Positions 1 to 10,017 of a DNA stretch of 64,000 nt are shown here, in pieces; the first letter of the stretch is position 1, and each line of letters begins with the position of its first letter. The notes beneath the pieces are model-generated. The model had not been told where the DNA came from and ran no database searches. It was given only the letters and a program-made list of their open reading frames with translations. The stretch is taken from IMG/VR virus record IMGVR_UViG_3300022935_000005, positions 1 to 64,000 of that record; one strand, given 5' to 3'. A program made the position numbers and the translations under genes.

Positions 1-278
1 TTTCGGAGACGCGCGTTTCCTCCAGTTCTCGCGTAGAGTTCCCCACTATTCACTTTGCCCCTCTGTACACGAGAGACTTGGTCGCCCCGCTGCTGATCGC
101 GTTTTTGTTCCCGCTTTCTCGGCCCAACTCCCCGCCAGAACACAAGAGAACACATGGGCTCTCCGACTATACAAAACTCCACGAGCCGCCTCTGTACACT
201 TTCCACGACAGCGCGCGCAGCGAGGAATCGAGAGGGCTTTTCCCCGGGGCTGAAGTGAAAAAAAGTTCCGCCGATTCA

Positions 279-330
279 TGAACACTCGGACCGCGGCGTC
301 TATAATCTAAATGTTGGTAGGGAATACCAA
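279..330 (+). promoter_or_regulatory. Early promoter (TGAACA-N16-TATAAT) with 5' hairpin
   Basis: TGAACA 279-284, TATAAT 301-306, TTGGTA/TACCAA stem 314-330; same architecture as later early promoters. Confidence 0.7.
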
Positions 331-361
331 ACGCATGCTGAGAAAAAAGGAGAAAGCATAC

Positions 362-589
362 ATGAATTATGAGAAGCAGTATCAGACTAGTCGCTTCACT
401 TTCGGAGTGAACCGTAACACCACGAGCAAGCAGGCCGGCAGCAATGTCGTCACAATCGCGACGAACGCGGGGGATGGATTCTACTCCACGCCGACCACGC
501 AGCTCTCCATGACTGTAAAGGAAGCCCGCGCTCTTCAGGGTTTCCTTAACTCGACTCTCGGAACTAACGACACCGCGGTCAACAGTTAG
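362..589 (+). CDS. Hypothetical early protein (75 aa)
   Basis: AAGGAG SD before ATG 362; lies between a promoter and a terminator. Confidence 0.8.
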   Translation: MNYEKQYQTSRFTFGVNRNTTSKQAGSNVVTIATNAGDGFYSTPTTQLSMTVKEARALQGFLNSTLGTNDTAVNS

Positions 590-626
590 GATCAAGCTCT
601 CACCAGCAGGTGACGGGAAACTCCGG

Positions 627-661
627 GCCGGCGGCTCATTACGGGTCGCCGGCTTTTTTTT
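627..661 (+). terminator. Rho-independent terminator
   Basis: GCCGGCGGC/GTCGCCGGC stem followed by a T8 run. Confidence 0.85.
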
Positions 662-683
662 GTAATCTTCTAGGGAGGTGTGT

Positions 684-767
684 ATGAGAGGTATCGACGT
701 CACAGAAGTCATCGGCATTGCTGCGGTGCTGGCGTTTATCGTCTTCGCGATTGTTGTCACGGCATAA
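684..767 (+). CDS. 27-aa single-TM peptide (MRGIDVTEVIGIAAVLAFIVFAIVVTA)
   Basis: GGAGGT SD, ATG 684, TAA 765-767; translated by hand, below ORF-track cutoff. Confidence 0.65.
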   Translation: MRGIDVTEVIGIAAVLAFIVFAIVVTA

Positions 768-788
768 AACAAAAAAAAGAGAAAAAAG

Positions 789-845
789 CGTGCAAAGCGC
801 CGGCGGTTTGTGGTATAATATTGATGTTGGTCGGGGTAGACCAAC
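789..845 (+). promoter_or_regulatory. Early promoter CGTGCAAA..TGTGGTATAAT plus 5' hairpin
   Basis: CGTGCAAA 789, TATAAT 814, GTTGGTC/GACCAAC stem 826-845. Confidence 0.85.
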
Positions 846-857
846 AAAGGAGACCGC

Positions 858-1088
858 ATGCCCACCGCCGAATACAACACCGCTTTCGCCGCCCAGCTCG
901 GCGACACCCGCCGGGACCTGGCCATTATGGGTTGCGTTGTCGAGGAACAGCGCTTCCAGATCATCCGTGACGGAGCGTTCCTGACCATGACCGAGCTTGA
1001 GTATGTCGACGCCGACGGCATGACCACCCAGCTCCTGTTCGCGGGTACCGGTGACGGCGCTCCCCTTGAACGGTTCAAGCGTTTCTGA
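858..1088 (+). CDS. Hypothetical early protein
   Basis: AAGGAG SD, directly after the promoter. Confidence 0.8.
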   Translation: MPTAEYNTAFAAQLGDTRRDLAIMGCVVEEQRFQIIRDGAFLTMTELEYVDADGMTTQLLFAGTGDGAPLERFKRF

Positions 1089-1096
1089 GATTGACC

Positions 1097-1192
1097 ATGA
1101 AGACAAATACCGATATCATCATTGGCGCGCTGTTGAAGGGCGTCATCATCATGTGTGTTGTTAAGCTCTTGATTGGAGGTGTCCATGTTTGA
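1097..1192 (+). CDS. 31-aa hydrophobic peptide
   Basis: Hand translation MKTNTDIIIGALLKGVIIMCVVKLLIGGVHV; fills the gap and overlaps the next start. Confidence 0.5.
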   Translation: MKTNTDIIIGALLKGVIIMCVVKLLIGGVHV

Positions 1193-1334
1193 TGTTCAGT
1201 TGCGGGCCGTGCACCCCAAGCTGGGTGAGGGAATTGTCCGGCCGCTCAACGGTATGTACTGCGGTCGAGTCCTTGTCGAGTTTGAGGGGTTCGTCCGGTG
1301 GGTAGAGATTGATGACTTGGAATTTCTTGACTGA
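1185..1334 (+). CDS. 49-aa SH3/Tudor-like protein
   Basis: GGAGGT SD; MFDVQLRAVHPKLGEGIV...VLVEFEG (HPxxGxGxV motif); not in ORF track. Confidence 0.75.
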   Translation: MFDVQLRAVHPKLGEGIVRPLNGMYCGRVLVEFEGFVRWVEIDDLEFLD

Positions 1335-1343
1335 GAGGTAGAC

Positions 1344-1544
1344 ATGTTTGCCGGCGATCTCGTTGCACACTGGAACTGGGGTACGGGTCTTGTCCTTAAT
1401 GCTGCACCCACCCGGGAAGAGGTTCCAGAGGAGTGGCAGCACGACTGGCAGAGCGTTGTCCTTGTCCAGTTTCCTGAGTGGCACAACGCATGTGTGTGGG
1501 TCCTTGCCGCCTTCCTTGACCCGATCACCGACGAGTGTGAATAA
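1344..1544 (+). CDS. Small SH3/Tudor-like protein
   Basis: GAGG SD; GDLVAHWNWGTGLV...VLVQF. Confidence 0.75.
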   Translation: MFAGDLVAHWNWGTGLVLNAAPTREEVPEEWQHDWQSVVLVQFPEWHNACVWVLAAFLDPITDECE

Positions 1545-1556
1545 ACTTCAGATAAT

Positions 1557-1615
1557 CGTGCAAAGTACCAGCCCTCTATGGTATAATCTAGATGTTGGTC
1601 GGGGTAACTCGGCAA
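1557..1615 (+). promoter_or_regulatory. Early promoter plus 5' hairpin
   Basis: CGTGCAAA 1557, TGGTATAAT (TATAAT 1582), GTTGGTCGGGGTA leader. Confidence 0.85.
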
Positions 1616-1625
1616 AGGAGAGCGA

Positions 1626-1862
1626 ATGAAGGTCGGCACTGTCACCATCCCGGACTGGGCACCCGAGACTCTGGCCACTGTCCGCGAGGACCTCACCATT
1701 GCCGATGTGGCCTGGGTTGAAAAGCAGTGGTGCGACGTCGACGACGAGAACCGGATGCGGTGGATGACCGAGGTCCTTGTCCCCATGGGACCGTGGGACG
1801 ATCTCAAGTTCTGGTTCGAGGGCCGGGGCGCTGACGCTCGGCTTGTGTGGGCCAACTTCTAG
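1626..1862 (+). CDS. Hypothetical early protein
   Basis: AAGGAG SD; high GC3 codon usage. Confidence 0.8.
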   Translation: MKVGTVTIPDWAPETLATVREDLTIADVAWVEKQWCDVDDENRMRWMTEVLVPMGPWDDLKFWFEGRGADARLVWANF

Positions 1863-1887
1863 AGACACTGACTGAGAGGGAGAGATA

Positions 1888-2076
1888 ATGGGAAAGCACC
1901 TTTACCGCTGGAACTGGAACGAGGGTGGATACAACCAGTGCTACGCCGATACGAAGGCTCAGGCACGGAAGCTGGGTAACGCCATTGTGCCCGGTAAGCT
2001 GACCATCGACGAGAAGACTTTCCGACGGGTGAAGAACCAGGATCGCTTCTGGAAGAACTACCCCATCTTTGATTAA
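1888..2076 (+). CDS. Hypothetical early protein
   Basis: GAGGGAG SD; 62-aa ORF. Confidence 0.75.
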   Translation: MGKHLYRWNWNEGGYNQCYADTKAQARKLGNAIVPGKLTIDEKTFRRVKNQDRFWKNYPIFD

Positions 2077-2085
2077 GGAATCTAT

Positions 2086-2241
2086 TCGGGAGCCAGTAAG
2101 GCCGCGCCCACGGTAACGCTGGAGAGTTAGAGCACAGGGATGGGCGTCCCTGGCGAGCGGACTGGGTCTGCACGGATCGCATCGAAAGCCGCAGGGTGAG
2201 TAGGCACCGTTTCTGTGGGTTCGAATCCCACCTCCCGCACC
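2086..2241 (+). ncRNA. tRNA-like structured RNA (~155 nt) with canonical T-arm and acceptor stem but expanded interior
   Basis: T-arm GTGGG-TTCGAAT-CCCAC 2215-2231; CTCCCG 2232-2237 pairs with CGGGAG 2087-2092; several internal helices. Confidence 0.6.
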
Positions 2242-2280
2242 CTTTGTTTTTGCCAATAAAATCAACAGCTTGGAGAGCAC

Positions 2281-2445
2281 ATGTGGCGTGAAATTGCAGA
2301 CCTGATTCGTGAGCGTTACGAGGAGCAGACCCGAGACCCCGATGAGGACATCATTGTCTGGGGCGATGAGTATTGGGAGGAGCCGCATTACGGCTTTGAT
2401 GCAGAGTACGATCCTCCAGAGTTTGATGTCGACATGCCGTTCTAA
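2281..2445 (+). CDS. 54-aa acidic peptide ending DVDMPF (SSB-tail-like)
   Basis: GGAG SD; hand translation, 19/54 residues D/E; not in ORF track. Confidence 0.75.
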   Translation: MWREIADLIRERYEEQTRDPDEDIIVWGDEYWEEPHYGFDAEYDPPEFDVDMPF

Positions 2446-2480
2446 AATAATCACAAAAAAATAAAATAATTTTGTACATT

Positions 2481-2510
2481 CGTGCAAAGGGCTGACCACT
2501 GTGGTATAAT
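2481..2510 (+). promoter_or_regulatory. Early promoter
   Basis: CGTGCAAA 2481, TGTGGTATAAT (TATAAT 2505), A-rich upstream. Confidence 0.85.
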
Positions 2511-2555
2511 CATAATGTAAGCAAGGTTGGTTAATAAGGAACACGGAGGTTCAGC

Positions 2556-2975
2556 ATGGCAAAGGTAGGATTCGGTAAGGGCGACATCGTTAAGGTTCGG
2601 GACGACGCGTTCGGCGACCGCTGGGACAACACGGTACGGGACTATGTGCCGGAGACTACCGTCCGCGCCAAGTACTACTACACTGCTGCTGACAAGGAGC
2701 GTATGCGGGAAGAACGCCGGAAGGCAATCGCAGAGGCTCAGGCGGCGGGTGAAGACACGTTCGGTATGTGCTTTGATGATGCGGGTGAGCCGCGGTTGAT
2801 GGGTGATGATGGCATTACCTACCTCAAGAAGGGTATCGGATACCGAGTCCTCAGAGCTCGATGCCGTCAGAACTTCAACTACCACACCACTGGCGGCTGG
2901 ACAAAGCTCCTTGACCTTGACACGGGCCGGGAAGTCTTCATCAAGACTGAGAAGCTCGAGCGCGTGGAAGCCTAA
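2556..2975 (+). CDS. Hypothetical protein, possible SH3/KOW-like fold with insertion
   Basis: GGAGG SD; FGKGDIVKV at N-terminus, LLDLDTGREVFIK at C-terminus. Confidence 0.8.
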   Translation: MAKVGFGKGDIVKVRDDAFGDRWDNTVRDYVPETTVRAKYYYTAADKERMREERRKAIAEAQAAGEDTFGMCFDDAGEPRLMGDDGITYLKKGIGYRVLRARCRQNFNYHTTGGWTKLLDLDTGREVFIKTEKLERVEA

Positions 2976-3009
2976 AAAGTTTAATCATTTCAATCACTTG
3001 GGGGGTCTC

Positions 3010-3321
3010 ATGGAAAACGTAATCAAGATCAAGGTCGAACCTTATAACCCACGACGCTCTTATGGGTATCGCGACTACGATATGGAGTGCGGTTGTTGTC
3101 AGCGACCGATCCGGAACCGTGAGACTGCGACTGTGGTCGTGCGGCGCTCTTGTGATGAGCCTGGGTTTGCAGAGTTCCTTCCGATCCCAGAGCATGAGCT
3201 GCCTAACGATCCCGTTGAGTGGGGTACCTTCATCGGTAGTCACTGTGCGAAGGCTCTGCCAAAGACCCACAAGATCACTTACCGAAAGCTTTGGAAGAAC
3301 CACAGCGATACGTGGGTCTAA
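3010..3321 (+). CDS. Putative Zn-binding hypothetical protein
   Basis: CGCC...IGSHC; ATG 3010 after GGGGG. Confidence 0.75.
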   Translation: MENVIKIKVEPYNPRRSYGYRDYDMECGCCQRPIRNRETATVVVRRSCDEPGFAEFLPIPEHELPNDPVEWGTFIGSHCAKALPKTHKITYRKLWKNHSDTWV

Positions 3322-3375
3322 AAACACGCGTTACTCGGATCATAAAAAAATATAACTTGAATAACTCGTGAAAAT

Positions 3376-3442
3376 CGTGCAAATGTGACCCCCTCTGTGG
3401 TATTATATAAATGAAGGTGGGGAAAGGGTTTGAACCCCCGCC
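3376..3442 (+). promoter_or_regulatory. Early promoter plus 5' hairpin
   Basis: CGTGCAAA 3376, TGTGGTATTAT (TATTAT 3401), GGTGGGG/CCCCGCC stem 3416-3442. Confidence 0.85.
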
Positions 3443-3467
3443 ACAGTAAACGTCACAAGGAGACACC

Positions 3468-4268
3468 ATGAACCTCAAGACCTTCCGACTCCTCCAGCAG
3501 GAAAACCCCCACGCCGCGATGATCTTCGATCTCTCCGAGCGGTTCCCACGTGGACCGAAGGGTAAGCTCCGGAAGAAGCACTATCGTCGTGCGGATACGT
3601 GGTCCGACACTTGGGTCTCTGATGAACTGCTGGGTGGTGAGCTCGGCTACGACATCTTTGAGCTCTACAAGGTTGCCAAAGCCGGGATCGGTACGTGGGA
3701 GCTCGCTGATCTTTCAACGACAATCGAAGCAGCTGGTATGGGCTACCACCAGTATATGCCCTCCGCGGACGGAACGGAGAGAGTGTTTGTAAGCCGTAAG
3801 CTCTTCAAGGCCGGGGCTCAGAGTACTCGCCGTCTCAACCGACTGAACGAACGGTTCACTCAGGTGCGGAAGATGGTCGCCGAAAAGAGCAAGAAGAACC
3901 TCTACAACATCCGTATTGGTCATGAATCCAATGAGGTTGTGGTCTTCGGTGACAGCGAGCAGCACGCTCGGATGCAGTATGAAATGATGCTGAAGGCTGG
4001 TTTTGATGCCGGCACTCGTGCGGGATTCATCAACGCGGGCTGGGGTGAGCGTGATGAAGCGCCGATCCGAGTCGTGTACCGCGGACCGAGTCACGGTGTC
4101 CATGAGATCATGGCAGCCAACCAGGAGTACTCGAAGGGAATCGATGATGCCGTCAGCAAGATGGAGCTCCAGATCAAGCAGCTACAGGGCAAGATCGCTG
4201 CCGCTCGGGACATCCAGCAGATGGTCGATATGTTCACCCTTCAGTCCTGTGCCGCGGCGGCTGAATAA
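3468..4268 (+). CDS. Hypothetical protein with C-terminal coiled coil
   Basis: AAGGAG SD; 266 aa. Confidence 0.85.
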   Translation: MNLKTFRLLQQENPHAAMIFDLSERFPRGPKGKLRKKHYRRADTWSDTWVSDELLGGELGYDIFELYKVAKAGIGTWELADLSTTIEAAGMGYHQYMPSADGTERVFVSRKLFKAGAQSTRRLNRLNERFTQVRKMVAEKSKKNLYNIRIGHESNEVVVFGDSEQHARMQYEMMLKAGFDAGTRAGFINAGWGERDEAPIRVVYRGPSHGVHEIMAANQEYSKGIDDAVSKMELQIKQLQGKIAAARDIQQMVDMFTLQSCAAAAE

Positions 4269-4295
4269 GCCAACGATATCAACCACTTAGAAGTT

Positions 4296-4323
4296 TGTAC
4301 ATTTCACAAAGTTGAGGTATAAT
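4296..4323 (+). promoter_or_regulatory. Promoter TGTACA-N16-TATAAT
   Basis: Same spacing as sites at 279, 14520, 17045 and 36717. Confidence 0.6.
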
Positions 4324-4615
4324 GAAAATGAATGGTTTGGTAGAAGCGCTTAAGACCGGATGTCTTGTCTTGACTGATGATGAGTTGAACATCGCTTTCA
4401 AGATTCTGTCAGATGAGATGCTGGTTCGGCGGGAGAGACGAGAGGCAGCGACAAAGAGCAAGCTGTATCAAGGACAGGCTGTGAAGTTCTTTCATAGCGA
4501 GCAGGGAGACATCCACGGAACAATTCATAGGGTAAAGTACAAGAAGGCATTGGTCAAGGATCTCAATAGTGGTGTGGTTTGGGATGTTCCATTCCACATG
4601 CTAACGATCGTTTAG
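4322..4615 (+). CDS. Hypothetical protein, C-terminal SH3-like barrel
   Basis: LYQGQAVKF...GTIHRV...ALVKD...WDVP; true start probably 4328 because 4322 overlaps the -10. Confidence 0.75.
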   Translation: MKMNGLVEALKTGCLVLTDDELNIAFKILSDEMLVRRERREAATKSKLYQGQAVKFFHSEQGDIHGTIHRVKYKKALVKDLNSGVVWDVPFHMLTIV

Positions 4616-4651
4616 TTTGAGTTGATCACCAAGATTACGAAGGAGACGGTG

Positions 4652-4846
4652 ATGGATAAGAACAAGAAGTACAGTCATAACAACCCCAACCCCCACCTCG
4701 ACCCAGATATGCGAGACTACGTTATGGACCTCTGGTTCCGTGGTGTCGATCCAGAAGCTATTTCTCGAATGGTCCGACGCAAGATCGCTCGAGAGCGTGG
4801 GTATGAAAACAGTAAGCGCGAAAAGAATGACAAAAATGTTGCATAA
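4652..4846 (+). CDS. Small basic hypothetical protein (possible HTH)
   Basis: AAGGAG SD at ~4640; VMDLWFRGVDPEAISRMV. Confidence 0.65.
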   Translation: MDKNKKYSHNNPNPHLDPDMRDYVMDLWFRGVDPEAISRMVRRKIARERGYENSKREKNDKNVA

Positions 4847-4857
4847 GTTTTGACAAT

Positions 4858-4923
4858 CGTGCAAACAGCATAGGAACTGTGGTATTATTTATATGTTGGT
4901 GGGGATAAGGAATGGCCGCCAAC
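4858..4923 (+). promoter_or_regulatory. Early promoter plus 5' hairpin
   Basis: CGTGCAAA 4858, TGTGGTATTAT (TATTAT 4883), GTTGGTGG/CCGCCAAC stem 4895-4923. Confidence 0.85.
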
Positions 4924-4948
4924 GTTAACCCAACCAAGGAGAGTTCAC

Positions 4949-6034
4949 ATGGACATCAAGACCATCAAGACCATCGTTCCCAACCTTCCCGCCAACATTG
5001 CTGTTCTCATGCGAGGACCGACAGGTGTGGGTAAGTCTCACGTAGCCCGGGCTTTCGCTGATGAGCTCGGTCTGCCCTTCATCGATGTCCGTGGTTCCAC
5101 CATGGATGAGGCGAAGGTCGGTGGTCTGCCGGATATGCGGGCTGTCGATGAGAAGAAGGTTGCCACCTTCGTGGTCCCTAGCTGGTTCAAGACCGCTTGT
5201 GACCGCCCCTGTGTCATCATGCTGGACGAGCTTAACCGCTCCATGCCGACCGTGATGCAGGCCTTCTTCCAGATTGTCCTGGACCGTGAGCTCGGTAACG
5301 ATGAGGACGGTGTCCCCTACCGACTCCACCCGGAAACCCGGGTCATCGCGGCCATCAACGCCGGTAACGAGTACGACGTCAACGAGATGGACCCCGCTCT
5401 GCTCCGCCGCTTCTGGGTCTGCGATGTTGAGCCCACAGTGGCTGACTGGACCGATTGGGCTGCCGGTGCTGGTGTGGACAAGGTCATGGTCGAGTTCATC
5501 AAGCAGGAGCCTGCGCACTGGCGTGTTGACCCGGCCTCGGTTGAGCCCGGTACGGTTGTCCCGACTCCGGCCAGCTGGCACCGTCTCAGCGACTCGCTGG
5601 TTCACATGGGTCTGGCACCGGAGAAGCTGGCTGGTAACGATGTTCCGGCTCACTTCTACCCCGTCCTGACTGGGTTCGTCGGAGTTGAGGCAGCTATTGC
5701 CTTCCGCGACTTCGTCAAGAACTACGAGCTCCAGATCACCGCTGAAGACATCCTCGAGGGTAAGATCAAGGCTGCAGACATCAAGGATGCTCCTGCTAGC
5801 CAGCTCGCCTCGGTGGTTGAGAAGATCACGGCTCACGCCGCGGACAACAACTGGAAGCCGGCTCAGGTGAAGCGGATTGCCAAGTTCGCGGAAGAGGTTG
5901 GTGGTGAGTTCCTCATCCAGGTCTTCACCGGAGTTCAGAAGGCAGGGAACATGAAGAACCTGCTGCCCCTGAACCAGGCCATCGGCATGAAGGTGGTCGA
6001 GCTGGTTAACGCCGCTCGCGCTACTCAGAAGTAA
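4949..6034 (+). CDS. MoxR-like AAA+ ATPase (AAA_5 type)
   Basis: Walker A GPTGVGKS, Walker B IMLDELNR, sensor AAIN, MDPALLRRF. Confidence 0.9.
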   Translation: MDIKTIKTIVPNLPANIAVLMRGPTGVGKSHVARAFADELGLPFIDVRGSTMDEAKVGGLPDMRAVDEKKVATFVVPSWFKTACDRPCVIMLDELNRSMPTVMQAFFQIVLDRELGNDEDGVPYRLHPETRVIAAINAGNEYDVNEMDPALLRRFWVCDVEPTVADWTDWAAGAGVDKVMVEFIKQEPAHWRVDPASVEPGTVVPTPASWHRLSDSLVHMGLAPEKLAGNDVPAHFYPVLTGFVGVEAAIAFRDFVKNYELQITAEDILEGKIKAADIKDAPASQLASVVEKITAHAADNNWKPAQVKRIAKFAEEVGGEFLIQVFTGVQKAGNMKNLLPLNQAIGMKVVELVNAARATQK

Positions 6035-6051
6035 ACGGGAGTTTGCTCCCT

Positions 6052-6094
6052 AAGGGGGACCGGGGTTTTTGGGTTAACTCGGTCCCCCTTCTTT
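6052..6094 (+). terminator. Rho-independent terminator
   Basis: AAGGGGGACCGGG/CTCGGTCCCCCTT stem followed by CTTT. Confidence 0.75.
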
Positions 6095-6124
6095 ATACAA
6101 TCCTCTATAGACAGGAGGTAACCC

Positions 6125-6331
6125 GTGGCCGAAAAGAAAGTAACTCTTAACGAGATGATCGCTCAGATTCGAGAGTGGCATACTGAAGCTCTTAACATGC
6201 GTAACGATGGATGGACACAGCAGGCTTTTAAGGATCGACTAGAGTTCCTACATGCCCGTATGACAGCTGTGGTAGAGTCAATCAACCCTCCTCAGACGGC
6301 GCCGACAGAGAATAATAACGACAAAGAGTAG
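6125..6331 (+). CDS. Hypothetical protein
   Basis: AGGAGG SD, GTG start. Confidence 0.75.
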   Translation: MAEKKVTLNEMIAQIREWHTEALNMRNDGWTQQAFKDRLEFLHARMTAVVESINPPQTAPTENNNDKE

Positions 6332-6336
6332 ACATT

Positions 6337-6401
6337 CGTGCAATAGTGCTTTAACCTGTGGTATTATATAAATGATGGTGGGGAAGGAATAGAGCTTCTC
6401 C
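6337..6401 (+). promoter_or_regulatory. Early promoter plus 5' hairpin
   Basis: CGTGCAAT 6337, TGTGGTATTAT (TATTAT 6362), GGGGAAG/CTTCTCC stem 6380-6401. Confidence 0.85.
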
Positions 6402-6420
6402 CAAAACTACAGGAGTCCAC

Positions 6421-7821
6421 ATGGCAGACAAGACGACCGCAACAGACGCTCCCTTTGAGCACGCCTCTGAAGAGGTAGCCAAGGCATTTGACCTTCAGCC
6501 TCACCTCGTTGGTATGATGCTGGAGGAGCCGTTCTACACTAAGGTCCTTCGAATCCTGACCAAGACCCGGACTCGGAAGATCCCGACCGCCGGAGTTATT
6601 GCGAAGGACGGGGACCTGCAGATGTACTGGAACGACCGGTTCATGGCGGCTCTGCCCGGTAAGCAGATTCGGGGAGTCCTCAAGCATGAGATGCTCCACC
6701 TCATCCTCGAACACACCACCACTCGTAAGTACGAGCCTCACAAGGTTTGGAACTACGCCACTGACTTGGCGATCAACAGCCACCTCATGGACGAGCTTCC
6801 TGAGTTTGGTCTCTTCCCGGGTAAGGCGTTTAAGCCGCTGACTGAGGAACAACAGGAGCGAATGGGTGAGGCAGCTGTCAAGCAGTACGAGGCAGTGTCC
6901 AAGAAGATTGAAAGCTTCCCAGCTGGGCAGGCTGCTGAGTGGTACTTCGCGCGGCTCATGGAAGATGATGAAGTCAAGGAAGCCATTGAGAACCCGAAGC
7001 AGAACGGTAAGAGTCTGGCTGATGCTCTCCGCGATGGTGATGTGACCATCAACGAGAACGGTCAGATTTGTGATGCTGACGGTAACCCTCTCCCCACTGT
7101 CCCTGGTACGCTGGATGACCATGACGGCTGGGGCGAAATGAGCGATGAAGACCGTGAGTACATCAAGGCCAAGGTCAAGCAGGCTGCTGGTGACGCTGCC
7201 AAGGAGTGCGACCAGAAGGGTAGCTGGGGTTCGGTACCTGCAGAACTGCGGAAGCAGATCAAGGCAGCACTGGTCAACGAAGTTCCCTGGCAGAAGATCC
7301 TTGACCGCTTCTGTGGTTACAGCCGACGGGCCAACCGGACCACGAGCTACAGCCGCCTTCACAGCACCATGGGTCGTTTGGTTCCCGGTGCCAAGCGTGG
7401 GTACACGAGCTCGGTGGCAGCTTACATTGACCAGTCCGGCTCAGTCAGCGATCGTGAGCTGGCCCTCTGCTTCGGCGAGCTGGCTAACCTGGCCAAGAAC
7501 ACTGAGTTCACCTGCTACCACTTCGACACCGAGGTGGATGAGAAGAGCAAGACGGTATGGAAGCGTAAGGGTCACCCTGCCAACCGGACTCGCTGCGGTG
7601 GTACGGACTTCGCTGCTCCGACCGAGCACGCTGGAAAGCACAAGCGGGAGTTCGACGGGTACATCATCCTGACCGACGGCTACGCTCCTGACCCGGGTCC
7701 GAGCCGGTTGCCCCGAGCTTGGGTGGTTACCCCTGACGGAGCAGTTCAGGACTGGATGTTCAACTACAAGAAGGACGTCATCGTAAAGATGACTTGGCCA
7801 AAGAGTCTGCAGGAGGCGTAA
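6421..7821 (+). CDS. DUF2201-family protein: HExxH metallopeptidase-like domain plus vWA-like domain
   Basis: HEMLH, WNYATDLAIN, MIDAS DQSGS, GGTDF, ILTDG. Confidence 0.9.
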   Translation: MADKTTATDAPFEHASEEVAKAFDLQPHLVGMMLEEPFYTKVLRILTKTRTRKIPTAGVIAKDGDLQMYWNDRFMAALPGKQIRGVLKHEMLHLILEHTTTRKYEPHKVWNYATDLAINSHLMDELPEFGLFPGKAFKPLTEEQQERMGEAAVKQYEAVSKKIESFPAGQAAEWYFARLMEDDEVKEAIENPKQNGKSLADALRDGDVTINENGQICDADGNPLPTVPGTLDDHDGWGEMSDEDREYIKAKVKQAAGDAAKECDQKGSWGSVPAELRKQIKAALVNEVPWQKILDRFCGYSRRANRTTSYSRLHSTMGRLVPGAKRGYTSSVAAYIDQSGSVSDRELALCFGELANLAKNTEFTCYHFDTEVDEKSKTVWKRKGHPANRTRCGGTDFAAPTEHAGKHKREFDGYIILTDGYAPDPGPSRLPRAWVVTPDGAVQDWMFNYKKDVIVKMTWPKSLQEA

Positions 7822-8129
7822 TGAAGTTTAAGAAGGCAAATGAACGAGTGGAATGTGCTGATGGATTCTCCATGAGTGTACAGGCAAGTGAACGCAGCTA
7901 CTGTACTCCACGTGACGACCAGGGACCCTATACTGCGGTAGAGGTAGGTTTCCCCTCCTCATATGATTACTACCTCCACGAATACGCTGAGACCCCGGAG
8001 GATCCAACGGGGACAGTATACGGTTGGGTACCAGCTGATACAGTTATGATGTGTATTGAAGCACATGGCGGCATGATCAGTGGAGAGCTTCCGCCGCTAG
8101 TAAAAACAGATTTTGAGAGCATCACATGA
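7821..8129 (+). CDS. Conserved phage hypothetical protein
   Basis: GGAGG SD; CADGFSMSVQAS...VEVGFPS...VYGWVP. Confidence 0.8.
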   Translation: MKFKKANERVECADGFSMSVQASERSYCTPRDDQGPYTAVEVGFPSSYDYYLHEYAETPEDPTGTVYGWVPADTVMMCIEAHGGMISGELPPLVKTDFESIT

Positions 8130-8470
8130 AAGTAGACGAAGAAAAAGTAGACATTGCCAGAATGTTCTGGATAGAGGACTGGGACAAGATGTCTGCCTTT
8201 GATACAGATATAGAGAACGTAGAGTGGCACGTCACAAACTGCATGACGTATCTCATCCAGCTCAGCGAAGAAGTGGTACCTCTATACAAGCCTCCGCCGA
8301 ACATAGAGCTAGAGGGAGACTGGAACGAGAGAGAGATGCTGACTCTATATAGAGACCTGCTTGAAGCGGCAGAGCGTCGGGGGTACGAACCAGATGCCGG
8401 GATGATCACCCGGATTCGGAAAGCTCTACCCCCGAAGCGTGTCCGGGTCCGGAGAGTTGTTCGGCCTTGA
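8126..8470 (+). CDS. Hypothetical protein
   Basis: ATGA overlap with upstream gene. Confidence 0.7.
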   Translation: MKVDEEKVDIARMFWIEDWDKMSAFDTDIENVEWHVTNCMTYLIQLSEEVVPLYKPPPNIELEGDWNEREMLTLYRDLLEAAERRGYEPDAGMITRIRKALPPKRVRVRRVVRP

Positions 8471-8475
8471 GTTCC

Positions 8476-8750
8476 TGTATAGAGGGGGGCTGGTAAACAG
8501 GCCTGGTAAAATGTACAGAGGGGCCCCACTCCGAGCGAGAAAAAGTGGCCCAGATGGCCCCATCGGGGGCCCCTGAAAACAGGCCCCTTTTGGCCCCTTC
8601 TGGTGGCCCCCTGGAGCCTACTCAGTGGGCCTTTCTGGAGGGCATATGCCTAAGCGCGGTAAAAAATTTTTTCGGAGCGATTTTGAAAACCAAAAGCCCA
8701 AAATCCCAAAAAAAATTCTCGGGAAATTTTGAAAACGAAAAGGGTACCCC
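8476..8750. repeat. Non-coding GGCCC repeat cluster followed by A/T tracts
   Basis: GGCCC at 8522, 8547, 8556, 8568, 8582, 8592, 8605; then AAAAAATTTTTT and repeated A-tracts. Confidence 0.7.
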
Positions 8751-8796
8751 AAGAGAGAGACTCAACGCGGTACTAAAGAAAACGAAAGAAGAGCAC

Positions 8797-9036
8797 ATGA
8801 ACAATCTCCACATCATTGCCAACTATCTATTCGATAACCCAGGAGCGCGGTACACGGATGTCACAAAGCACTTGTGCCAGGAGCGCGGAAAGGTATGGAG
8901 CAAAGGGCACTATACTCGGTACTTCACCAACCCGATCTACAGCTCAGGTCGCCGGTACGCTCACCACCTCTGGTGCAAGACCCCATGCGGTGGATGGATG
9001 TTGACATTGGAAGGATATGGATATGTCCGCAAGTAA
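8797..9036 (+). CDS. Hypothetical protein (possible winged helix)
   Basis: MNNLHIIANYLFDNPGARYTDV; ORF-track extension to 8545 spans the repeat DNA and is probably spurious. Confidence 0.7.
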   Translation: MNNLHIIANYLFDNPGARYTDVTKHLCQERGKVWSKGHYTRYFTNPIYSSGRRYAHHLWCKTPCGGWMLTLEGYGYVRK

Positions 9037-9298
9037 GCTCATAGAGGTCGGAGATCTGGTCCGGTGGGGCTGGCCCCGCTTCCACAGCGATTCTCGCGTG
9101 GGAATCGTGACGCGAGTAGATATCAAACCTCGAGGCGCCGGATTCAGAGTGCCCAACCCGCGAGTCCGCTATGTTGTGCAGTGGTTCTACCCAGATGGAC
9201 AACCCAGCATCACTCAAGAGCACGTCTTCAACAATGAGATAACACGAGTCACAGAGGATCGAAATCCATGGCAAGACAAAACAGAGACTTCAAAGTAG
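9017..9298 (+). CDS. Small SH3/KOW-like protein
   Basis: IEVGDLVRW...GIVTRV...YVVQWF. Confidence 0.8.
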   Translation: MDMSASKLIEVGDLVRWGWPRFHSDSRVGIVTRVDIKPRGAGFRVPNPRVRYVVQWFYPDGQPSITQEHVFNNEITRVTEDRNPWQDKTETSK

Positions 9299-9534
9299 GA
9301 GACATTGTCCAGTGGGCTCCACCGATCGGCGGCGCCAACTCCGGTCACGTCTTTAGAGATGCAGTGGGTCTTATTGTAGGTGTCAAGTACCCAGACCCCG
9401 ACTCACAGCGTAACGAATGGGCAGACCCTCACATGTGGTACACAGTCCAGTGGTTCAGAGACGGCATTGCATCGGGTCGACCAGATCACATCGTTGAACA
9501 CCACATTCAGAGAGTTCGAGATGACGCACCATAG
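9268..9534 (+). CDS. Small SH3/KOW-like protein
   Basis: FKVGDIVQW...GLIVGV...YTVQWF. Confidence 0.8.
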   Translation: MARQNRDFKVGDIVQWAPPIGGANSGHVFRDAVGLIVGVKYPDPDSQRNEWADPHMWYTVQWFRDGIASGRPDHIVEHHIQRVRDDAP

Positions 9535-9817
9535 CAAGCTCAGCATCGGCGCGGGAGACACAGTGGTCCGGGTTCATGAGCAGGAAGACACCGATCCCTA
9601 CCCAGGACTCGTTATCAGGCGGGTAGAACCTCGTGAACTCTTGAGTATGGTGTTTGGAGAGGGAGATGACTTCGAAATGGGGGAAGCTCTATGGATGCGA
9701 GATGCAGCATCTGGTCTAGAGGAGTATTCGGGTGAATGGGTCCGCTATGAAGTCCTTTGGCCGGATGGTCGGTTCTCGATCGAATCGATCGCCCAAATCA
9801 GGAAGGCATATTCGTGA
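9521..9817 (+). CDS. Small SH3/KOW-like protein
   Basis: IGAGDTVVRV...GLVIRR...YEVLWPDG. Confidence 0.75.
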   Translation: MTHHSKLSIGAGDTVVRVHEQEDTDPYPGLVIRRVEPRELLSMVFGEGDDFEMGEALWMRDAASGLEEYSGEWVRYEVLWPDGRFSIESIAQIRKAYS

Positions 9818-10017
9818 TCGGTGTGGGAGACATTGTCTGCGTTGACGGAGATCTACTGGGTACAGCAATGGGACTCGGTCTTGTTACCCGGGTTTGTGAG
9901 TCTCGCTTTTCTAATTCATGTACTCGGTTTGTAGACGTCCTCTGGGCCTCGGGTGATATGTTCAAGGATGTTGATATGAACGTGCTGTTGCTTGTGCATT
10001 CTGCCGGCAGCCCGTGA
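9814..10017 (+). CDS. Small SH3/KOW-like protein
   Basis: GTGA overlap; IGVGDIVCV...GLVTRV...VDVLWASG. Confidence 0.75.
   Translation: MIGVGDIVCVDGDLLGTAMGLGLVTRVCESRFSNSCTRFVDVLWASGDMFKDVDMNVLLLVHSAGSP

What the first reader, a model, noticed from the sequence alone, without database searches (positions are those of the whole stretch)
2281..2445. Free-standing SSB C-terminal tail mimic
Seen: an unannotated 54-aa ORF with SD, 19 acidic residues, ending EFDVDMPF and with no room for an OB fold. Established: bacterial SSB recruits ExoI, RecQ, RecG, PriA, Ung, RNase HI and Pol III chi through its C-terminal DDDIPF. Inference: an early decoy that titrates host SSB partners or defence sensors, or an acidic DNA mimic. 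It lies directly after the tRNA-like RNA.
Basis: partly seen in the sequence, partly recalled or inferred. Interest (0 to 1): 0.7.

Follow-up and report, generated by a model that had tools for sequence, protein, structure and literature searches.

The report
Phage mini-protein carrying an SSB tail
A jumbo phage from salt-marsh metagenomes encodes a real 54-residue early protein that has no DNA-binding domain but ends in the same docking peptide that bacterial and phage single-strand-binding proteins use to recruit repair and replication enzymes, so it probably plugs into, and most likely jams, the host's SSB partner network.

Summary
Window 2281..2445 (+) encodes a 54-aa protein with 19 D/E, 10 aromatic residues and pI about 4. 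It has a GGAG five bases before the ATG and ends EFDVDMPF. It is a real gene: five variants (78-100% identity) give omega 0.08-0.24 in its frame against 0.8-1.85 in the open antisense frame. One indel is in frame, and the stop position is kept while the stop codon changes.

P53 and F54 are invariant, and tail changes are conservative (F/L, V/I, M/I). BLASTP against E. coli SSB aligns only the last ten residues of both proteins (6/10 identical). The last six residues, DVDMPF, also end bona fide phrog_44 phage SSBs.

AlphaFold2 gives a helix at residues 2-16 and no other structure. The phage's own SSB is gp32-like and ends LEDDF. The gene lies in a cluster of six phage-specific extended -10 promoters.

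Best reading (0.4): an early tip-only decoy that occupies SSB-Ct pockets on host enzymes. Main rival (0.25): an adaptor, because the N-terminal helix is the most conserved part. Binding is untested; the one complex prediction gave no verdict.

Other unrelated small proteins too short for an OB fold also carry this tip in viral contigs.

The parts
1558..1587 (+). Promoter of the transcription unit that contains the gene: GTGCAAAG, 13-14 nt, then TGGTATAAT (extended -10).
   Evidence: It is one of nine copies of this motif in the genome, all on the + strand, and six of them lie at 790..6338. The timing ('early', read by host sigma-70 RNA polymerase) is inferred from the consensus.
1626..2076 (+). 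Two small upstream ORFs of the same unit (78 aa at 1626..1862, 62 aa at 1888..2076), with no family match.
   Evidence: They are conserved in L250.
2087..2239 (+). tRNA-like element: CGGGAG at 2087..2092 can pair with CTCCCG at 2232..2237, and there is a canonical T-arm GTGGG-TTCGAAT-CCCAC at 2215..2231. The interior is about 115 nt, far longer than in a tRNA.
   Evidence: sequence. There is no ARAGORN call (3). Rfam gives nothing at gathering score, and the best weak hit is tRNA-Sec at 16.9 bits against a threshold of 47. The fold is no better than shuffles, z = -0.33. The element is conserved in L004 and L250 and absent in L002/L003. RNA-library contigs of run X17 cover only 2104..2238.
2272..2277 (+). 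Shine-Dalgarno GGAGAG, five bases before the ATG.
   Evidence: It is kept as TGGAG in all relatives, including those without the tRNA-like element.
2281..2355 (+). ORF54 residues 1-25: conserved N-terminal module with a predicted amphipathic helix at 2-16.
   Evidence: helix 2-16; 23 of 25 residues are invariant and pN is 0.00-0.03.
2356..2409 (+). ORF54 residues 26-43: variable linker rich in acidic and aromatic residues, predicted unstructured. One relative has an in-frame one-codon insertion here.
   Evidence: pN 0.07-0.21.
2410..2445 (+). ORF54 residues 44-54 plus the stop codon: SSB-Ct-type tip DPPEFDVDMPF, with Phe as the last residue.
   Evidence: P and F are invariant. The stop position is kept in all variants while the codon changes from TAA to TAG.
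2482..2510 (+). Next promoter of the same class. It starts the following unit, so ORF54 is the last gene of its unit.

Best explanation
ORF54 is a genuine small protein of a jumbo phage, probably expressed early. It has three parts: a conserved N-terminal amphipathic helix (residues 1-25), a variable acidic and aromatic disordered linker (26-43), and a C-terminal tip (44-54). The tip is a natural variant of the SSB C-terminal docking peptide (SSB-Ct), with Pro-Phe-COOH at the very end. It has no ssDNA-binding domain.

The most likely mechanism is competition. The tip inserts its terminal Phe and free carboxylate into the hydrophobic pocket and basic lip that host SSB-interacting enzymes use to dock on SSB. 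Such enzymes include exonuclease I, RecQ, RecG, PriA, RecO, the chi subunit of Pol III, primase and others. Because ORF54 cannot sit on ssDNA, occupied enzymes are uncoupled from SSB-coated DNA. The expected result is damped host replication restart, recombination and nuclease action early in infection. The phage's own replication is spared because its gp32-type SSB carries a different tail (LEDDF). The helix may oligomerise the protein and so raise avidity, as the four tails of an SSB tetramer do.

Shown here: the gene is real and under purifying selection; the motif matches real SSB tails; Pro, Phe and the stop position are conserved; no OB fold is present; the gene lies in a dense cluster of phage-specific sigma-70-type promoters; the phage SSB has a different tail.

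Inferred: binding to SSB-Ct pockets, competition with host SSB, the physiological outcome, early timing, and oligomerisation.
For: Gene reality:
- Sense omega is 0.08-0.24, against 0.8-1.85 for the antisense frame.
- There is an in-frame indel and a conserved Shine-Dalgarno sequence.
- Five variants occur in independent samples.
- RNA-library contigs cover the gene. In run X12 the depth is 28.8 over this region, against about 0.5-7.5 over 40-46 kb. This is weak evidence only.

Motif:
- BLASTP against E. coli K-12 SSB aligns only the two C-terminal decapeptides, 6/10 identical and 8/10 positive.
- P53 and F54 are invariant. Position -3 is I or M, -5 is V or I, and -7 is F or L. Natural SSB tails also vary between F and L at -7 (FDDDIPF, LDDEIPF, FDDEIPF; PMC13490951).
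- Genuine phrog_44 SSBs end DDVDMPF (L267), EDVDMPF (L279) and DMDIPF (L276). Mini-SSBs end FDDMDMPF.
- Literature states that Pro-to-Ser (ssb113) and loss of the terminal Phe abolish partner binding. It also states that the partner pocket reads the Phe side chain and its alpha-carboxyl group (PMC3159472).

Chance:
- 1 of 18,221 background ORFs has such an ending, and it is this ORF.

No DNA-binding domain:
- The protein is 54 aa with a helix at 2-16 only, and it has no Pfam or PHROG hit.

Context:
- The phage SSB is gp32-like (PF08804, E = 2.6e-14) and ends LEDDF. The genome has no PF00436 SSB.
- Promoter cluster.

Precedent:
- Phage ssDNA-binding proteins of other folds carry DDIPF or DDDIPF tips, presumed to engage host partners (bioRxiv 10.64898/2026.10.27.754916; PMC13687109).
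Against: - No binding evidence of any kind exists. The one complex prediction, with E. coli exonuclease I, gave no verdict.
- The host is unknown, so the host SSB tail and partner set are unknown (one search was uninformative).
- Free SSB-Ct peptides are generally weak binders (my recollection, not checked here), so a decoy would need high expression or avidity. Neither is shown.
- The most conserved part is the N-terminal helix, not the tip. A pure decoy does not need it.
- Position -5 is hydrophobic (V/I) where canonical tails have Asp.
- Only five close variants exist (78% identity or more), so conservation of the tip is weak evidence on its own.
- The structure model is low-confidence and built on four sequences, so a small fold cannot be excluded.
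Confidence: 0.4

Rival explanations
1. Adaptor rather than decoy. The conserved N-terminal helix anchors ORF54 to another component, for example the phage's gp32-type SSB, a replisome or recombination protein, or a host protein. The tip then recruits host SSB-interacting enzymes to that site. This would supply in trans the host-type tail that the phage SSB lacks.
For: - Residues 1-25 are the most conserved part: pN 0.00-0.03, against 0.07-0.21 in the linker and 0-0.11 in the tip.
- The layout of module, disordered linker and tip copies SSB's own.
- The phage SSB ends LEDDF, not IPF.
- Another tip-bearing small family, phrog_1811 (73-76 aa, looks helical from its sequence; no structure was predicted), sits among DNA-metabolism genes: a Cas4-like exonuclease, a phosphoesterase and a kinase.
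Against: - No partner for the helix is known or predicted.
- No paralogue or fused form exists in the genome.
- The gene sits among host-takeover-like early orphan genes rather than in the replication module, about 137 kb from the gp32-like gene.
Confidence: 0.25
2. Acidic DNA or nucleic-acid mimic, in the manner of T7 gp5.9, Ocr, Arn, Ugi or p56. The negative surface would block a DNA-binding host protein such as RecBCD, a restriction enzyme, UDG or a nucleoid protein. The C-terminal PF would be incidental.
For: - 19 of 54 residues are acidic, net charge is about -15 and pI about 4.
- The size class matches small phage mimics. T7 gp5.9 is a phage-encoded RecBCD inhibitor (PMC9836394, abstract only); that it is a small acidic DNA mimic of about 52 aa is my recollection.
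- The position suggests early expression.
Against: - No compact fold is predicted. The last 35 residues contain five Pro and two Gly.
- There is no PHROG or Pfam similarity to any known mimic.
- This reading does not explain the invariant terminal Pro-Phe, the fixed stop position, or the identity of the last six residues to real SSB tails.
Confidence: 0.1
3. The tip is read by a phage-encoded partner rather than a host one. Candidates are a phage recombinase, helicase or polymerase with an SSB-Ct-type pocket. ORF54 would then regulate a phage process.
For: - Phage proteins such as lambda Red-beta bind SSB-Ct (PMC6393309 listed; PMC13490951). The same is reported for lambda Orf (my recollection).
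- Many unrelated phage proteins of 55 to 617 aa end in D[VIM]D[IM]PF.
- The genome encodes a DinG-like helicase.
Against: - The phage's own SSB carries a different tail, so its replisome is expected to read that one.
- No candidate partner was identified.
Confidence: 0.08
4. The resemblance is coincidental. ORF54 is a small early protein with an unrelated role, and its acidic, aromatic C-terminus only happens to end in PF.
For: - The family is tiny and close-knit (78% identity or more), so conservation proves little.
- The first-stage scan looked at many windows.
- Acidic composition raises the chance of D-x-D.
Against: - 0 of about 18,220 other ORFs has such an ending.
- Ten aligned C-terminal residues match E. 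coli SSB.
- The hexapeptide is identical to the tails of true SSBs.
- Substitutions in relatives move towards the canonical tip, M to I.
Confidence: 0.12

Closest known systems
C-terminal tip of bacterial SSB (SSB-Ct, ...PMDFDDDIPF in E. coli)
   Same: - The last ten residues align end to end, 6/10 identical and 8/10 similar.
- It has a terminal Pro-Phe with a free carboxylate, acidic residues at -4 and -6, an aliphatic residue at -3, and F/L at -7.
- It is preceded by a disordered segment.
   Different: - There is no OB fold or tetramerisation core, so no ssDNA binding is expected.
- Position -5 is V or I instead of Asp.
- The linker is acidic and aromatic rather than rich in Gly, Gln and Pro.
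Phage-encoded SSBs and SSB-like proteins with host-type tips (phrog_44 SSBs; mini-SSBs phrog_18154/7364; DUF669 proteins; Bas48 protein 0087)
   Same: They are phage-encoded carriers of the same tip. Some end with exactly DVDMPF (L267, L279). The literature reads the tip as a way into host DNA metabolism.
   Different: All of them have a DNA-binding domain. ORF54 has none.
Synthetic SSB-Ct peptides and small-molecule inhibitors of SSB-partner interactions
   Same: The proposed mode of action is the same: occupy the SSB-Ct pocket of partner enzymes and uncouple them from SSB. The literature uses SSB-Ct peptide as a competitor in ExoI assays (PMC3159472) and treats these interfaces as antibacterial targets (PMC3594151 and PMC5872125, listed).
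   Different: Those are laboratory reagents. ORF54 would be a natural, genetically encoded version with an extra conserved helix.
Small acidic phage host-takeover proteins and DNA mimics (T7 gp5.9, Ocr)
   Same: They share small size, strong negative charge and a likely early function against host DNA enzymes.
   Different: Those proteins are described as mimicking DNA (Ocr and SAUGI abstracts); that they do so as folded dimers is my recollection. ORF54 is predicted mostly disordered, and its distinctive feature is a short linear motif at the C-terminus. There is no sequence similarity.
Other small tip-bearing viral proteins found here
   Same: These are short proteins, too small for an OB fold plus linker, that end in a canonical or near-canonical SSB-Ct tip. 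This suggests a recurrent design.
- phrog_1811 members ending DDDIPF, 73-76 aa.
- The L286 family, 55-67 aa, ending HPDIDIPF.
- The L271 family, 69 aa, ending SSDVDIPF.
- L220, L168, L241 and L305.
   Different: They are not homologous to ORF54: hhalign against the phrog_1811 set gives probability 2.7%. All are uncharacterised. Several look folded (helical) rather than disordered.

Membership tests
SSB-Ct short linear motif (docking tip of bacterial-type SSBs) | Phe is the very last residue, so its side chain and free alpha-carboxyl group can enter the partner pocket. | tested here: met
   F54 is followed by the stop codon in all five variants. The stop position is kept although the codon differs, TAA against TAG. 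The requirement comes from PMC3159472.
SSB-Ct short linear motif (docking tip of bacterial-type SSBs) | Penultimate Pro (its loss is the ssb113 defect). | tested here: met
   P53 is invariant, with a synonymous CCG/CCT change. The requirement comes from PMC3159472.
SSB-Ct short linear motif (docking tip of bacterial-type SSBs) | Aliphatic residue at -3 and acidic residues at -4 to -6 (canonical D-D-D-I). | tested here: met
   The family has D-[VI]-D-[IM], with V or I at -5 instead of Asp. The same hexapeptides end genuine phrog_44 SSBs: DDVDMPF in L267, EDVDMPF in L279, DMDIPF in L276. The sequence therefore lies within the natural range.
SSB-Ct short linear motif (docking tip of bacterial-type SSBs) | The tip is presented on a flexible, disordered segment. 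| tested here: inconclusive
   AlphaFold2 gives no secondary structure after residue 16, but pLDDT is 57-69 and the alignment has only 4 sequences. The segment has five Pro and two Gly.
SSB-Ct short linear motif (docking tip of bacterial-type SSBs) | Binds the SSB-Ct pocket of SSB-interacting proteins. | not testable with these tools
   The one complex prediction allowed (E. coli exonuclease I plus ORF54) returned no verdict. This needs peptide-binding assays.
Bacterial-type SSB protein family (PF00436, OB fold) | An OB-fold ssDNA-binding and tetramerisation domain. | tested here: not met
   No Pfam or PHROG hit. The protein is 54 aa with one predicted helix. BLASTP against E. coli SSB aligns the tail only. 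ORF54 is not an SSB.
DNA-mimic proteins (Ocr, gp5.9, Arn, Ugi/p56 type) | A compact fold that displays carboxylates in the geometry of a DNA backbone. | tested here: inconclusive
   The charge fits. No compact fold is predicted, and there is no similarity to known mimics. The model is low-confidence, so this is not excluded.
T7 gp2.5 / gp4-type acidic tail with terminal Phe (read by the phage's own polymerase) | An acidic C-terminal tail ending in Phe on a phage replication protein, recognised by a phage partner. | not tested
   In this genome that pattern is shown by the gp32-like SSB, which ends LEDDF (G000 139585..140397). ORF54 has the Pro-Phe form typical of bacterial-type SSBs instead.

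The most novel reading that the evidence does not exclude
ORF54 may be one example of an unrecognised class of phage 'tip-only' proteins. These would be small proteins without any DNA-binding domain that display the host SSB docking peptide in order to jam or rewire the whole SSB interactome. They would be a natural counterpart of the synthetic SSB-partner inhibitors. The class appears to have arisen several times independently, given at least five unrelated small families with the tip in viral contigs.
Probability: 0.3. Interest if true: 0.8.

Novelty: new variant of a known kind. Interest (0 to 1): 0.62.

Why it matters
SSB is the hub that brings more than a dozen replication, repair and recombination enzymes to single-stranded DNA, through one short peptide. 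Phages are known to copy that peptide onto their own ssDNA-binding proteins. A carrier with no DNA-binding part would be different: a one-peptide switch that could disconnect many host genome-maintenance enzymes at once. Alternatively it could lend a host-type tail to a phage SSB that lacks one.

Five full-text searches of the held paper library turned up no description of such a protein.

If confirmed, the finding would:
- add a new host-takeover or anti-nuclease strategy;
- give a genetically encoded probe for SSB-partner interactions, which are already pursued as antibacterial targets;
- explain a set of uncharacterised small phage proteins that end in (D)DIPF.

The hypothesis is cheap to test, using a peptide, a few purified enzymes and two point mutants.

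Tried and rejected
- Complex prediction of ORF54 with E. coli exonuclease I (a first try with a wrong reference name failed). Score 0.05, no verdict. This is not evidence either way.
- More relatives were sought in four ways:
  - the word-indexed search of 5.8 billion proteins found 3;
  - the exhaustive profile search of 1.84 billion representatives found only the family's own cluster plus three long low-complexity proteins;
  - Viral contigs gave none;
  - Metagenome contigs gave only the own contig, an identical one and one 93% variant. Two further hits (L251, L252) are a chance match inside a 498-aa protein.
- tblastn against named phages gave only spurious partial hits, and blastn gave none. 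There are no paralogues in the genome.
- Pfam, PHROGs, PDB sequences and the ESM Atlas gave nothing usable.
- Homology between ORF54's helix and the phrog_1811 tip-bearing family was tested because of a shared ...L(K/R)x(K/R)YE... look. hhalign gave probability 2.7%, so it was rejected.
- Host identification from the tRNA-like 3' end was tried. The exact 25-mer is a generic T-arm and acceptor found mostly in archaeal MAGs, so it is uninformative. The nearest named phages by helicase are only about 30-35% identical, and the large 1209-aa protein matches only a C-terminal piece in cyanophages.
- The tRNA-like element as a known RNA: ARAGORN gave none, Rfam gave nothing at gathering score, and the best E-value hit is tRNA-Sec at 16.9 bits. 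The fold is no better than shuffles.
- The 246-aa minus-strand ORF 1804..2544 was considered as the real gene and rejected, because its frame evolves at omega 0.8-1.85.
- An FtsZ C-terminal peptide mimic, a clamp-binding motif and similar short motifs were considered from memory. They were rejected because they do not place Pro-Phe at the extreme C-terminus.
- Transcription: RNA-library contigs cover the gene and are deeper over the early region than over 40-46 kb in one run. They are unstranded assembler contigs, and DNA carry-over cannot be excluded.

Full report
**What is there**

Window 2281..2445 (+) is an ATG-to-TAA ORF of 54 codons. GGAG lies at 2272..2275, five bases before the start. 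The product has 19 acidic, 4 basic and 10 aromatic residues, pI about 4.05 and mass 6.8 kDa, and it ends EFDVDMPF.

The window is the first 64 kb of a 280,913-bp IMG/VR phage record. The sequence is found in salt-marsh and estuary metagenomes and metatranscriptomes. An independent 9-kb contig (L249) runs from the record's last 752 bases straight into its first bases. The genome is therefore circular or circularly permuted, and the gene is not at a physical end.

**Is it a gene?**

- The word-indexed search of 5.8 billion proteins found three relatives, of 93, 89 and 78% identity.
- A DNA-level scan of metagenome contigs added one more variant (L250) and an identical copy.
- An exhaustive profile search of 1.84 billion cluster representatives found nothing further.
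- In its own frame the ORF evolves at omega 0.08-0.24. The codon-aligned antisense frame is open in every variant and belongs to a 246-aa minus-strand ORF, but it evolves at 0.8-1.85.
- The most divergent variant has an in-frame one-codon insertion.
- The GGAG and its leader are kept even where the upstream sequence is unrelated.
- There are no paralogues in the genome.

The plus-strand ORF is the gene.

**Context**

The first 7 kb holds six copies of a phage-specific promoter: GTGCAA[AT], 13-14 nt, then TGGTAT[AT]AT, an extended -10. All nine genomic copies are on the + strand.

One copy, at 1558..1587, heads a unit made of two orphan ORFs, a tRNA-like element (2087..2239) and ORF54. The next copy, at 2482..2510, starts the following unit. 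Dense short units driven by sigma-70-type promoters and filled with orphan genes are typical of early host-takeover regions. The timing itself is an inference.

Contigs from RNA libraries cover the gene. In one run they are about four times deeper over this region than over structural genes at 40-46 kb. This is compatible with transcription but does not prove it.

**The tail**

BLASTP of ORF54 against E. coli K-12 SSB (fetched) aligns only the last ten residues of each protein. PPEFDVDMPF pairs with PMDFDDDIPF, 6/10 identical and 8/10 similar.

Across the five variants, P53 and F54 never change, and the stop stays in place while the codon changes from TAA to TAG. The other tail changes are conservative: F/L at -7, V/I at -5 and M/I at -3. 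Three variants read DVDIPF or DIDIPF, which is closer to the canonical DDDIPF.

The literature gives the requirements:
- six conserved residues, DDDIPF;
- loss of partner binding when the Pro becomes Ser (ssb113) or the terminal Phe is altered;
- a partner pocket that reads the Phe side chain and its alpha-carboxyl group, plus a basic ridge for the Asp residues (PMC3159472).

Natural SSB tails also vary at -7 and -4: FDDDIPF, LDDEIPF and FDDEIPF (PMC13490951).

Two points of doubt were the Met at -3 and the Val at -5. An uncapped scan of IMG/VR for D[VIM]D[IM]PF followed by TAA answered them (64 loci). Genuine phrog_44 SSBs end DDVDMPF (L267), EDVDMPF (L279) and DMDIPF (L276), and mini-SSBs end FDDMDMPF. 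ORF54's last six residues are therefore a natural SSB tip, letter for letter.

As a chance control, 18,221 ORFs of at least 30 codons in 1.14 Mb were examined. The only one ending [DE]x[DE][ILMV]PF is ORF54.

**The rest of the protein**

AlphaFold2 on the four-sequence alignment gives a helix at residues 2-16 and no other secondary structure (mean pLDDT 63.6). There is no Pfam, PHROG, PDB or Atlas match.

Region by region:

| Residues | Region | pN |
|---|---|---|
| 1-25 | N-terminal module | 0.00-0.03 |
| 26-43 | Linker | 0.07-0.21 |
| 44-54 | Tip | 0-0.11 |

The protein is thus a conserved helix, a variable acidic and aromatic linker, and a conserved tip. This is SSB's own layout of core, disordered linker and tip, but with the DNA-binding core replaced by a single helix.

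**The phage's own SSB**

The genome has no PF00436 SSB. It does encode a gp32-like protein (PF08804, E = 2.6e-14) at G000 139585..140397, next to a DnaQ-like exonuclease. Its acidic tail ends LEDDF. The phage replisome is therefore expected to read a different tail, and the IPF-type tip on ORF54 points at host-type partners.

**Mechanism**

I commit to the decoy reading (0.4). The tip occupies the SSB-Ct pockets of host SSB-interacting enzymes. Because ORF54 cannot bind ssDNA, those enzymes are uncoupled from SSB-coated DNA early in infection. The helix may provide oligomerisation and avidity.

The main rival (0.25) is an adaptor. Here the helix anchors the protein to a phage or host component, and the tip recruits host enzymes instead of titrating them. 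The very strong conservation of the helix is the main argument for this reading.

The lesser rivals are:
- a DNA mimic (0.1), which does not explain the invariant terminal Pro-Phe or the identity to SSB tips;
- a phage-encoded reader of the tip (0.08);
- coincidence (0.12).

Binding itself is untested. The one complex prediction allowed returned no verdict.

**Comparison with what is known**

ORF54 is not a member of the SSB family, because the OB fold was tested and not met. It does meet the sequence definition of the SSB-Ct motif.

Phage ssDNA-binding proteins of several folds are known to carry this tip. The authors read it as a route into host DNA metabolism: Bas48 protein 0087 and DUF669 proteins. 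Five full-text searches found no report of a carrier without a DNA-binding domain.

**A wider pattern**

In a capped sample of 119 IMG/VR loci with DDDIPF followed by TAA, 18 of the 109 complete ORFs are shorter than 100 aa. They divide as follows:
- about eight are mini-SSBs (phrog_18154 or phrog_7364);
- six belong to phrog_1811, an uncharacterised helical-looking family of 73-76 aa;
- the rest are orphans.

The phrog_1811 relatives in cyanophages and pelagiphages are all annotated as hypothetical, and most of the matches stop short of the tail.

The second scan added two more small families: 55-67 aa ending HPDIDIPF, and 69 aa ending SSDVDIPF. It also found large proteins of 413-617 aa with the tip. 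None is homologous to ORF54 (for phrog_1811).

Small tip-bearing proteins too short for an OB fold therefore recur in phages. This raises the prior that the tip on ORF54 is functional, and it suggests a class worth a systematic census.

**Verdict**

The motif-level interpretation is well supported. The function is plausible but unproven, and decoy and adaptor cannot yet be told apart. Novelty: a new variant of a known kind. Interest: 0.62.

Noticed in passing
window 2087..2239 (+): tRNA-like element with a perfect T-arm (GTGGG-TTCGAAT-CCCAC) and a 6-bp acceptor-like closing helix, but about 115 nt between them. ARAGORN and Rfam do not call it. It is conserved in L004 and L250, with changes in one internal segment, and is absent in L002/L003, where ORF54 still occurs. 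In RNA run X17 the only contigs on this stretch cover just 2104..2238, as a stable small RNA would.
   Followed up: partly
window 790..6367 and G000 235940, 242713, 252768 (+): A phage-specific promoter class: GTGCAA[AT], 13-14 nt, TGGTAT[AT]AT, followed by a conserved ATGTTGGTxGGGG box. There are nine copies in the genome, all on the + strand, and six are packed into the first 7 kb.
   Followed up: partly
window 1..10000 compared with the rest of G000: The first 10 kb has G+C of 0.53-0.55, while the rest of the genome is mostly 0.39-0.48 (0.52 at 235-240 kb). The related short contigs L002-L005, L249 and L250 are equally GC-rich. The early region has a composition of its own.
   Followed up: no
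L249 compared with G000 280162..280913 and 9..5442: An independent contig joins the end of the 280,913-bp record to its start. The 'linear' record is therefore a circular or circularly permuted genome.
   Followed up: yes
G000 138553..140397 (locus L006): A DnaQ/RNase T-like exonuclease (247 aa) is followed by a gp32-like SSB (PF08804) whose acidic tail ends LEDDF. The genome has no bacterial-type SSB.
   Followed up: yes
G000 240723..241901 (locus L007 224..1402): Three tandem paralogues all start MKITK(N/R)QL(R/L)RII(K/R)EEK. The middle one (97 aa) ends GAGYDDDDF. This acidic tail with a terminal Phe recalls the phage's own gp32-like tail (LEDDF), so it may be a second small tail-bearing protein.
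   Followed up: no
L133:2622-2846:-, L142:1279-1497:-, L148:2983-3207:-, L173:1958-2176:+, L203:4580-4798:+, L233:351-578:-: phrog_1811 (function unknown) members of 73-76 aa that look helical from sequence and end in a perfect DDDIPF. In L133 the gene lies next to a Cas4-like exonuclease, a metallophosphoesterase and a nucleotide kinase. Relatives in cyanomyophages and pelagiphages are all annotated hypothetical, and many seem to lack the tip.
   Followed up: partly
L286:13297-13461:+ (also L288, L311, L269, L315); L271:4891-5097:- (also L281, L310); L220:5103-5306:-; L168:11756-11944:-; L241:2313-2570:+; L305: Further unrelated small viral proteins (55-86 aa) end in DIDIPF, DVDIPF, DMDIPF or DDDIPF. 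They have no PHROG or Pfam match (L305 was not scanned) and are too short for an OB fold plus linker.
   Followed up: partly
L255, L266, L295, L302, L312 (viral contigs): Large proteins of 413-617 aa also end in D[VI]DIPF. The SSB-type tip appears on many different phage protein scaffolds.
   Followed up: no
window 4949..7821 (+): A MoxR-like AAA_5 ATPase (361 aa) is followed by a DUF2201 protein (putative metallopeptidase plus VWA-like domain, 466 aa). The ATPase is conserved in the related contigs L002/L003, whose called genes continue into the second gene.
   Followed up: partly
window 2446..3330 compared with L002, L004 and L250: Directly downstream of ORF54 the gene content differs between relatives. 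The window has a 139-aa ORF (2556..2975) where L002-L005 carry a 66-aa gene (L250 also diverges there) behind a similar promoter. ORF54 lies at a recombination boundary.
   Followed up: no
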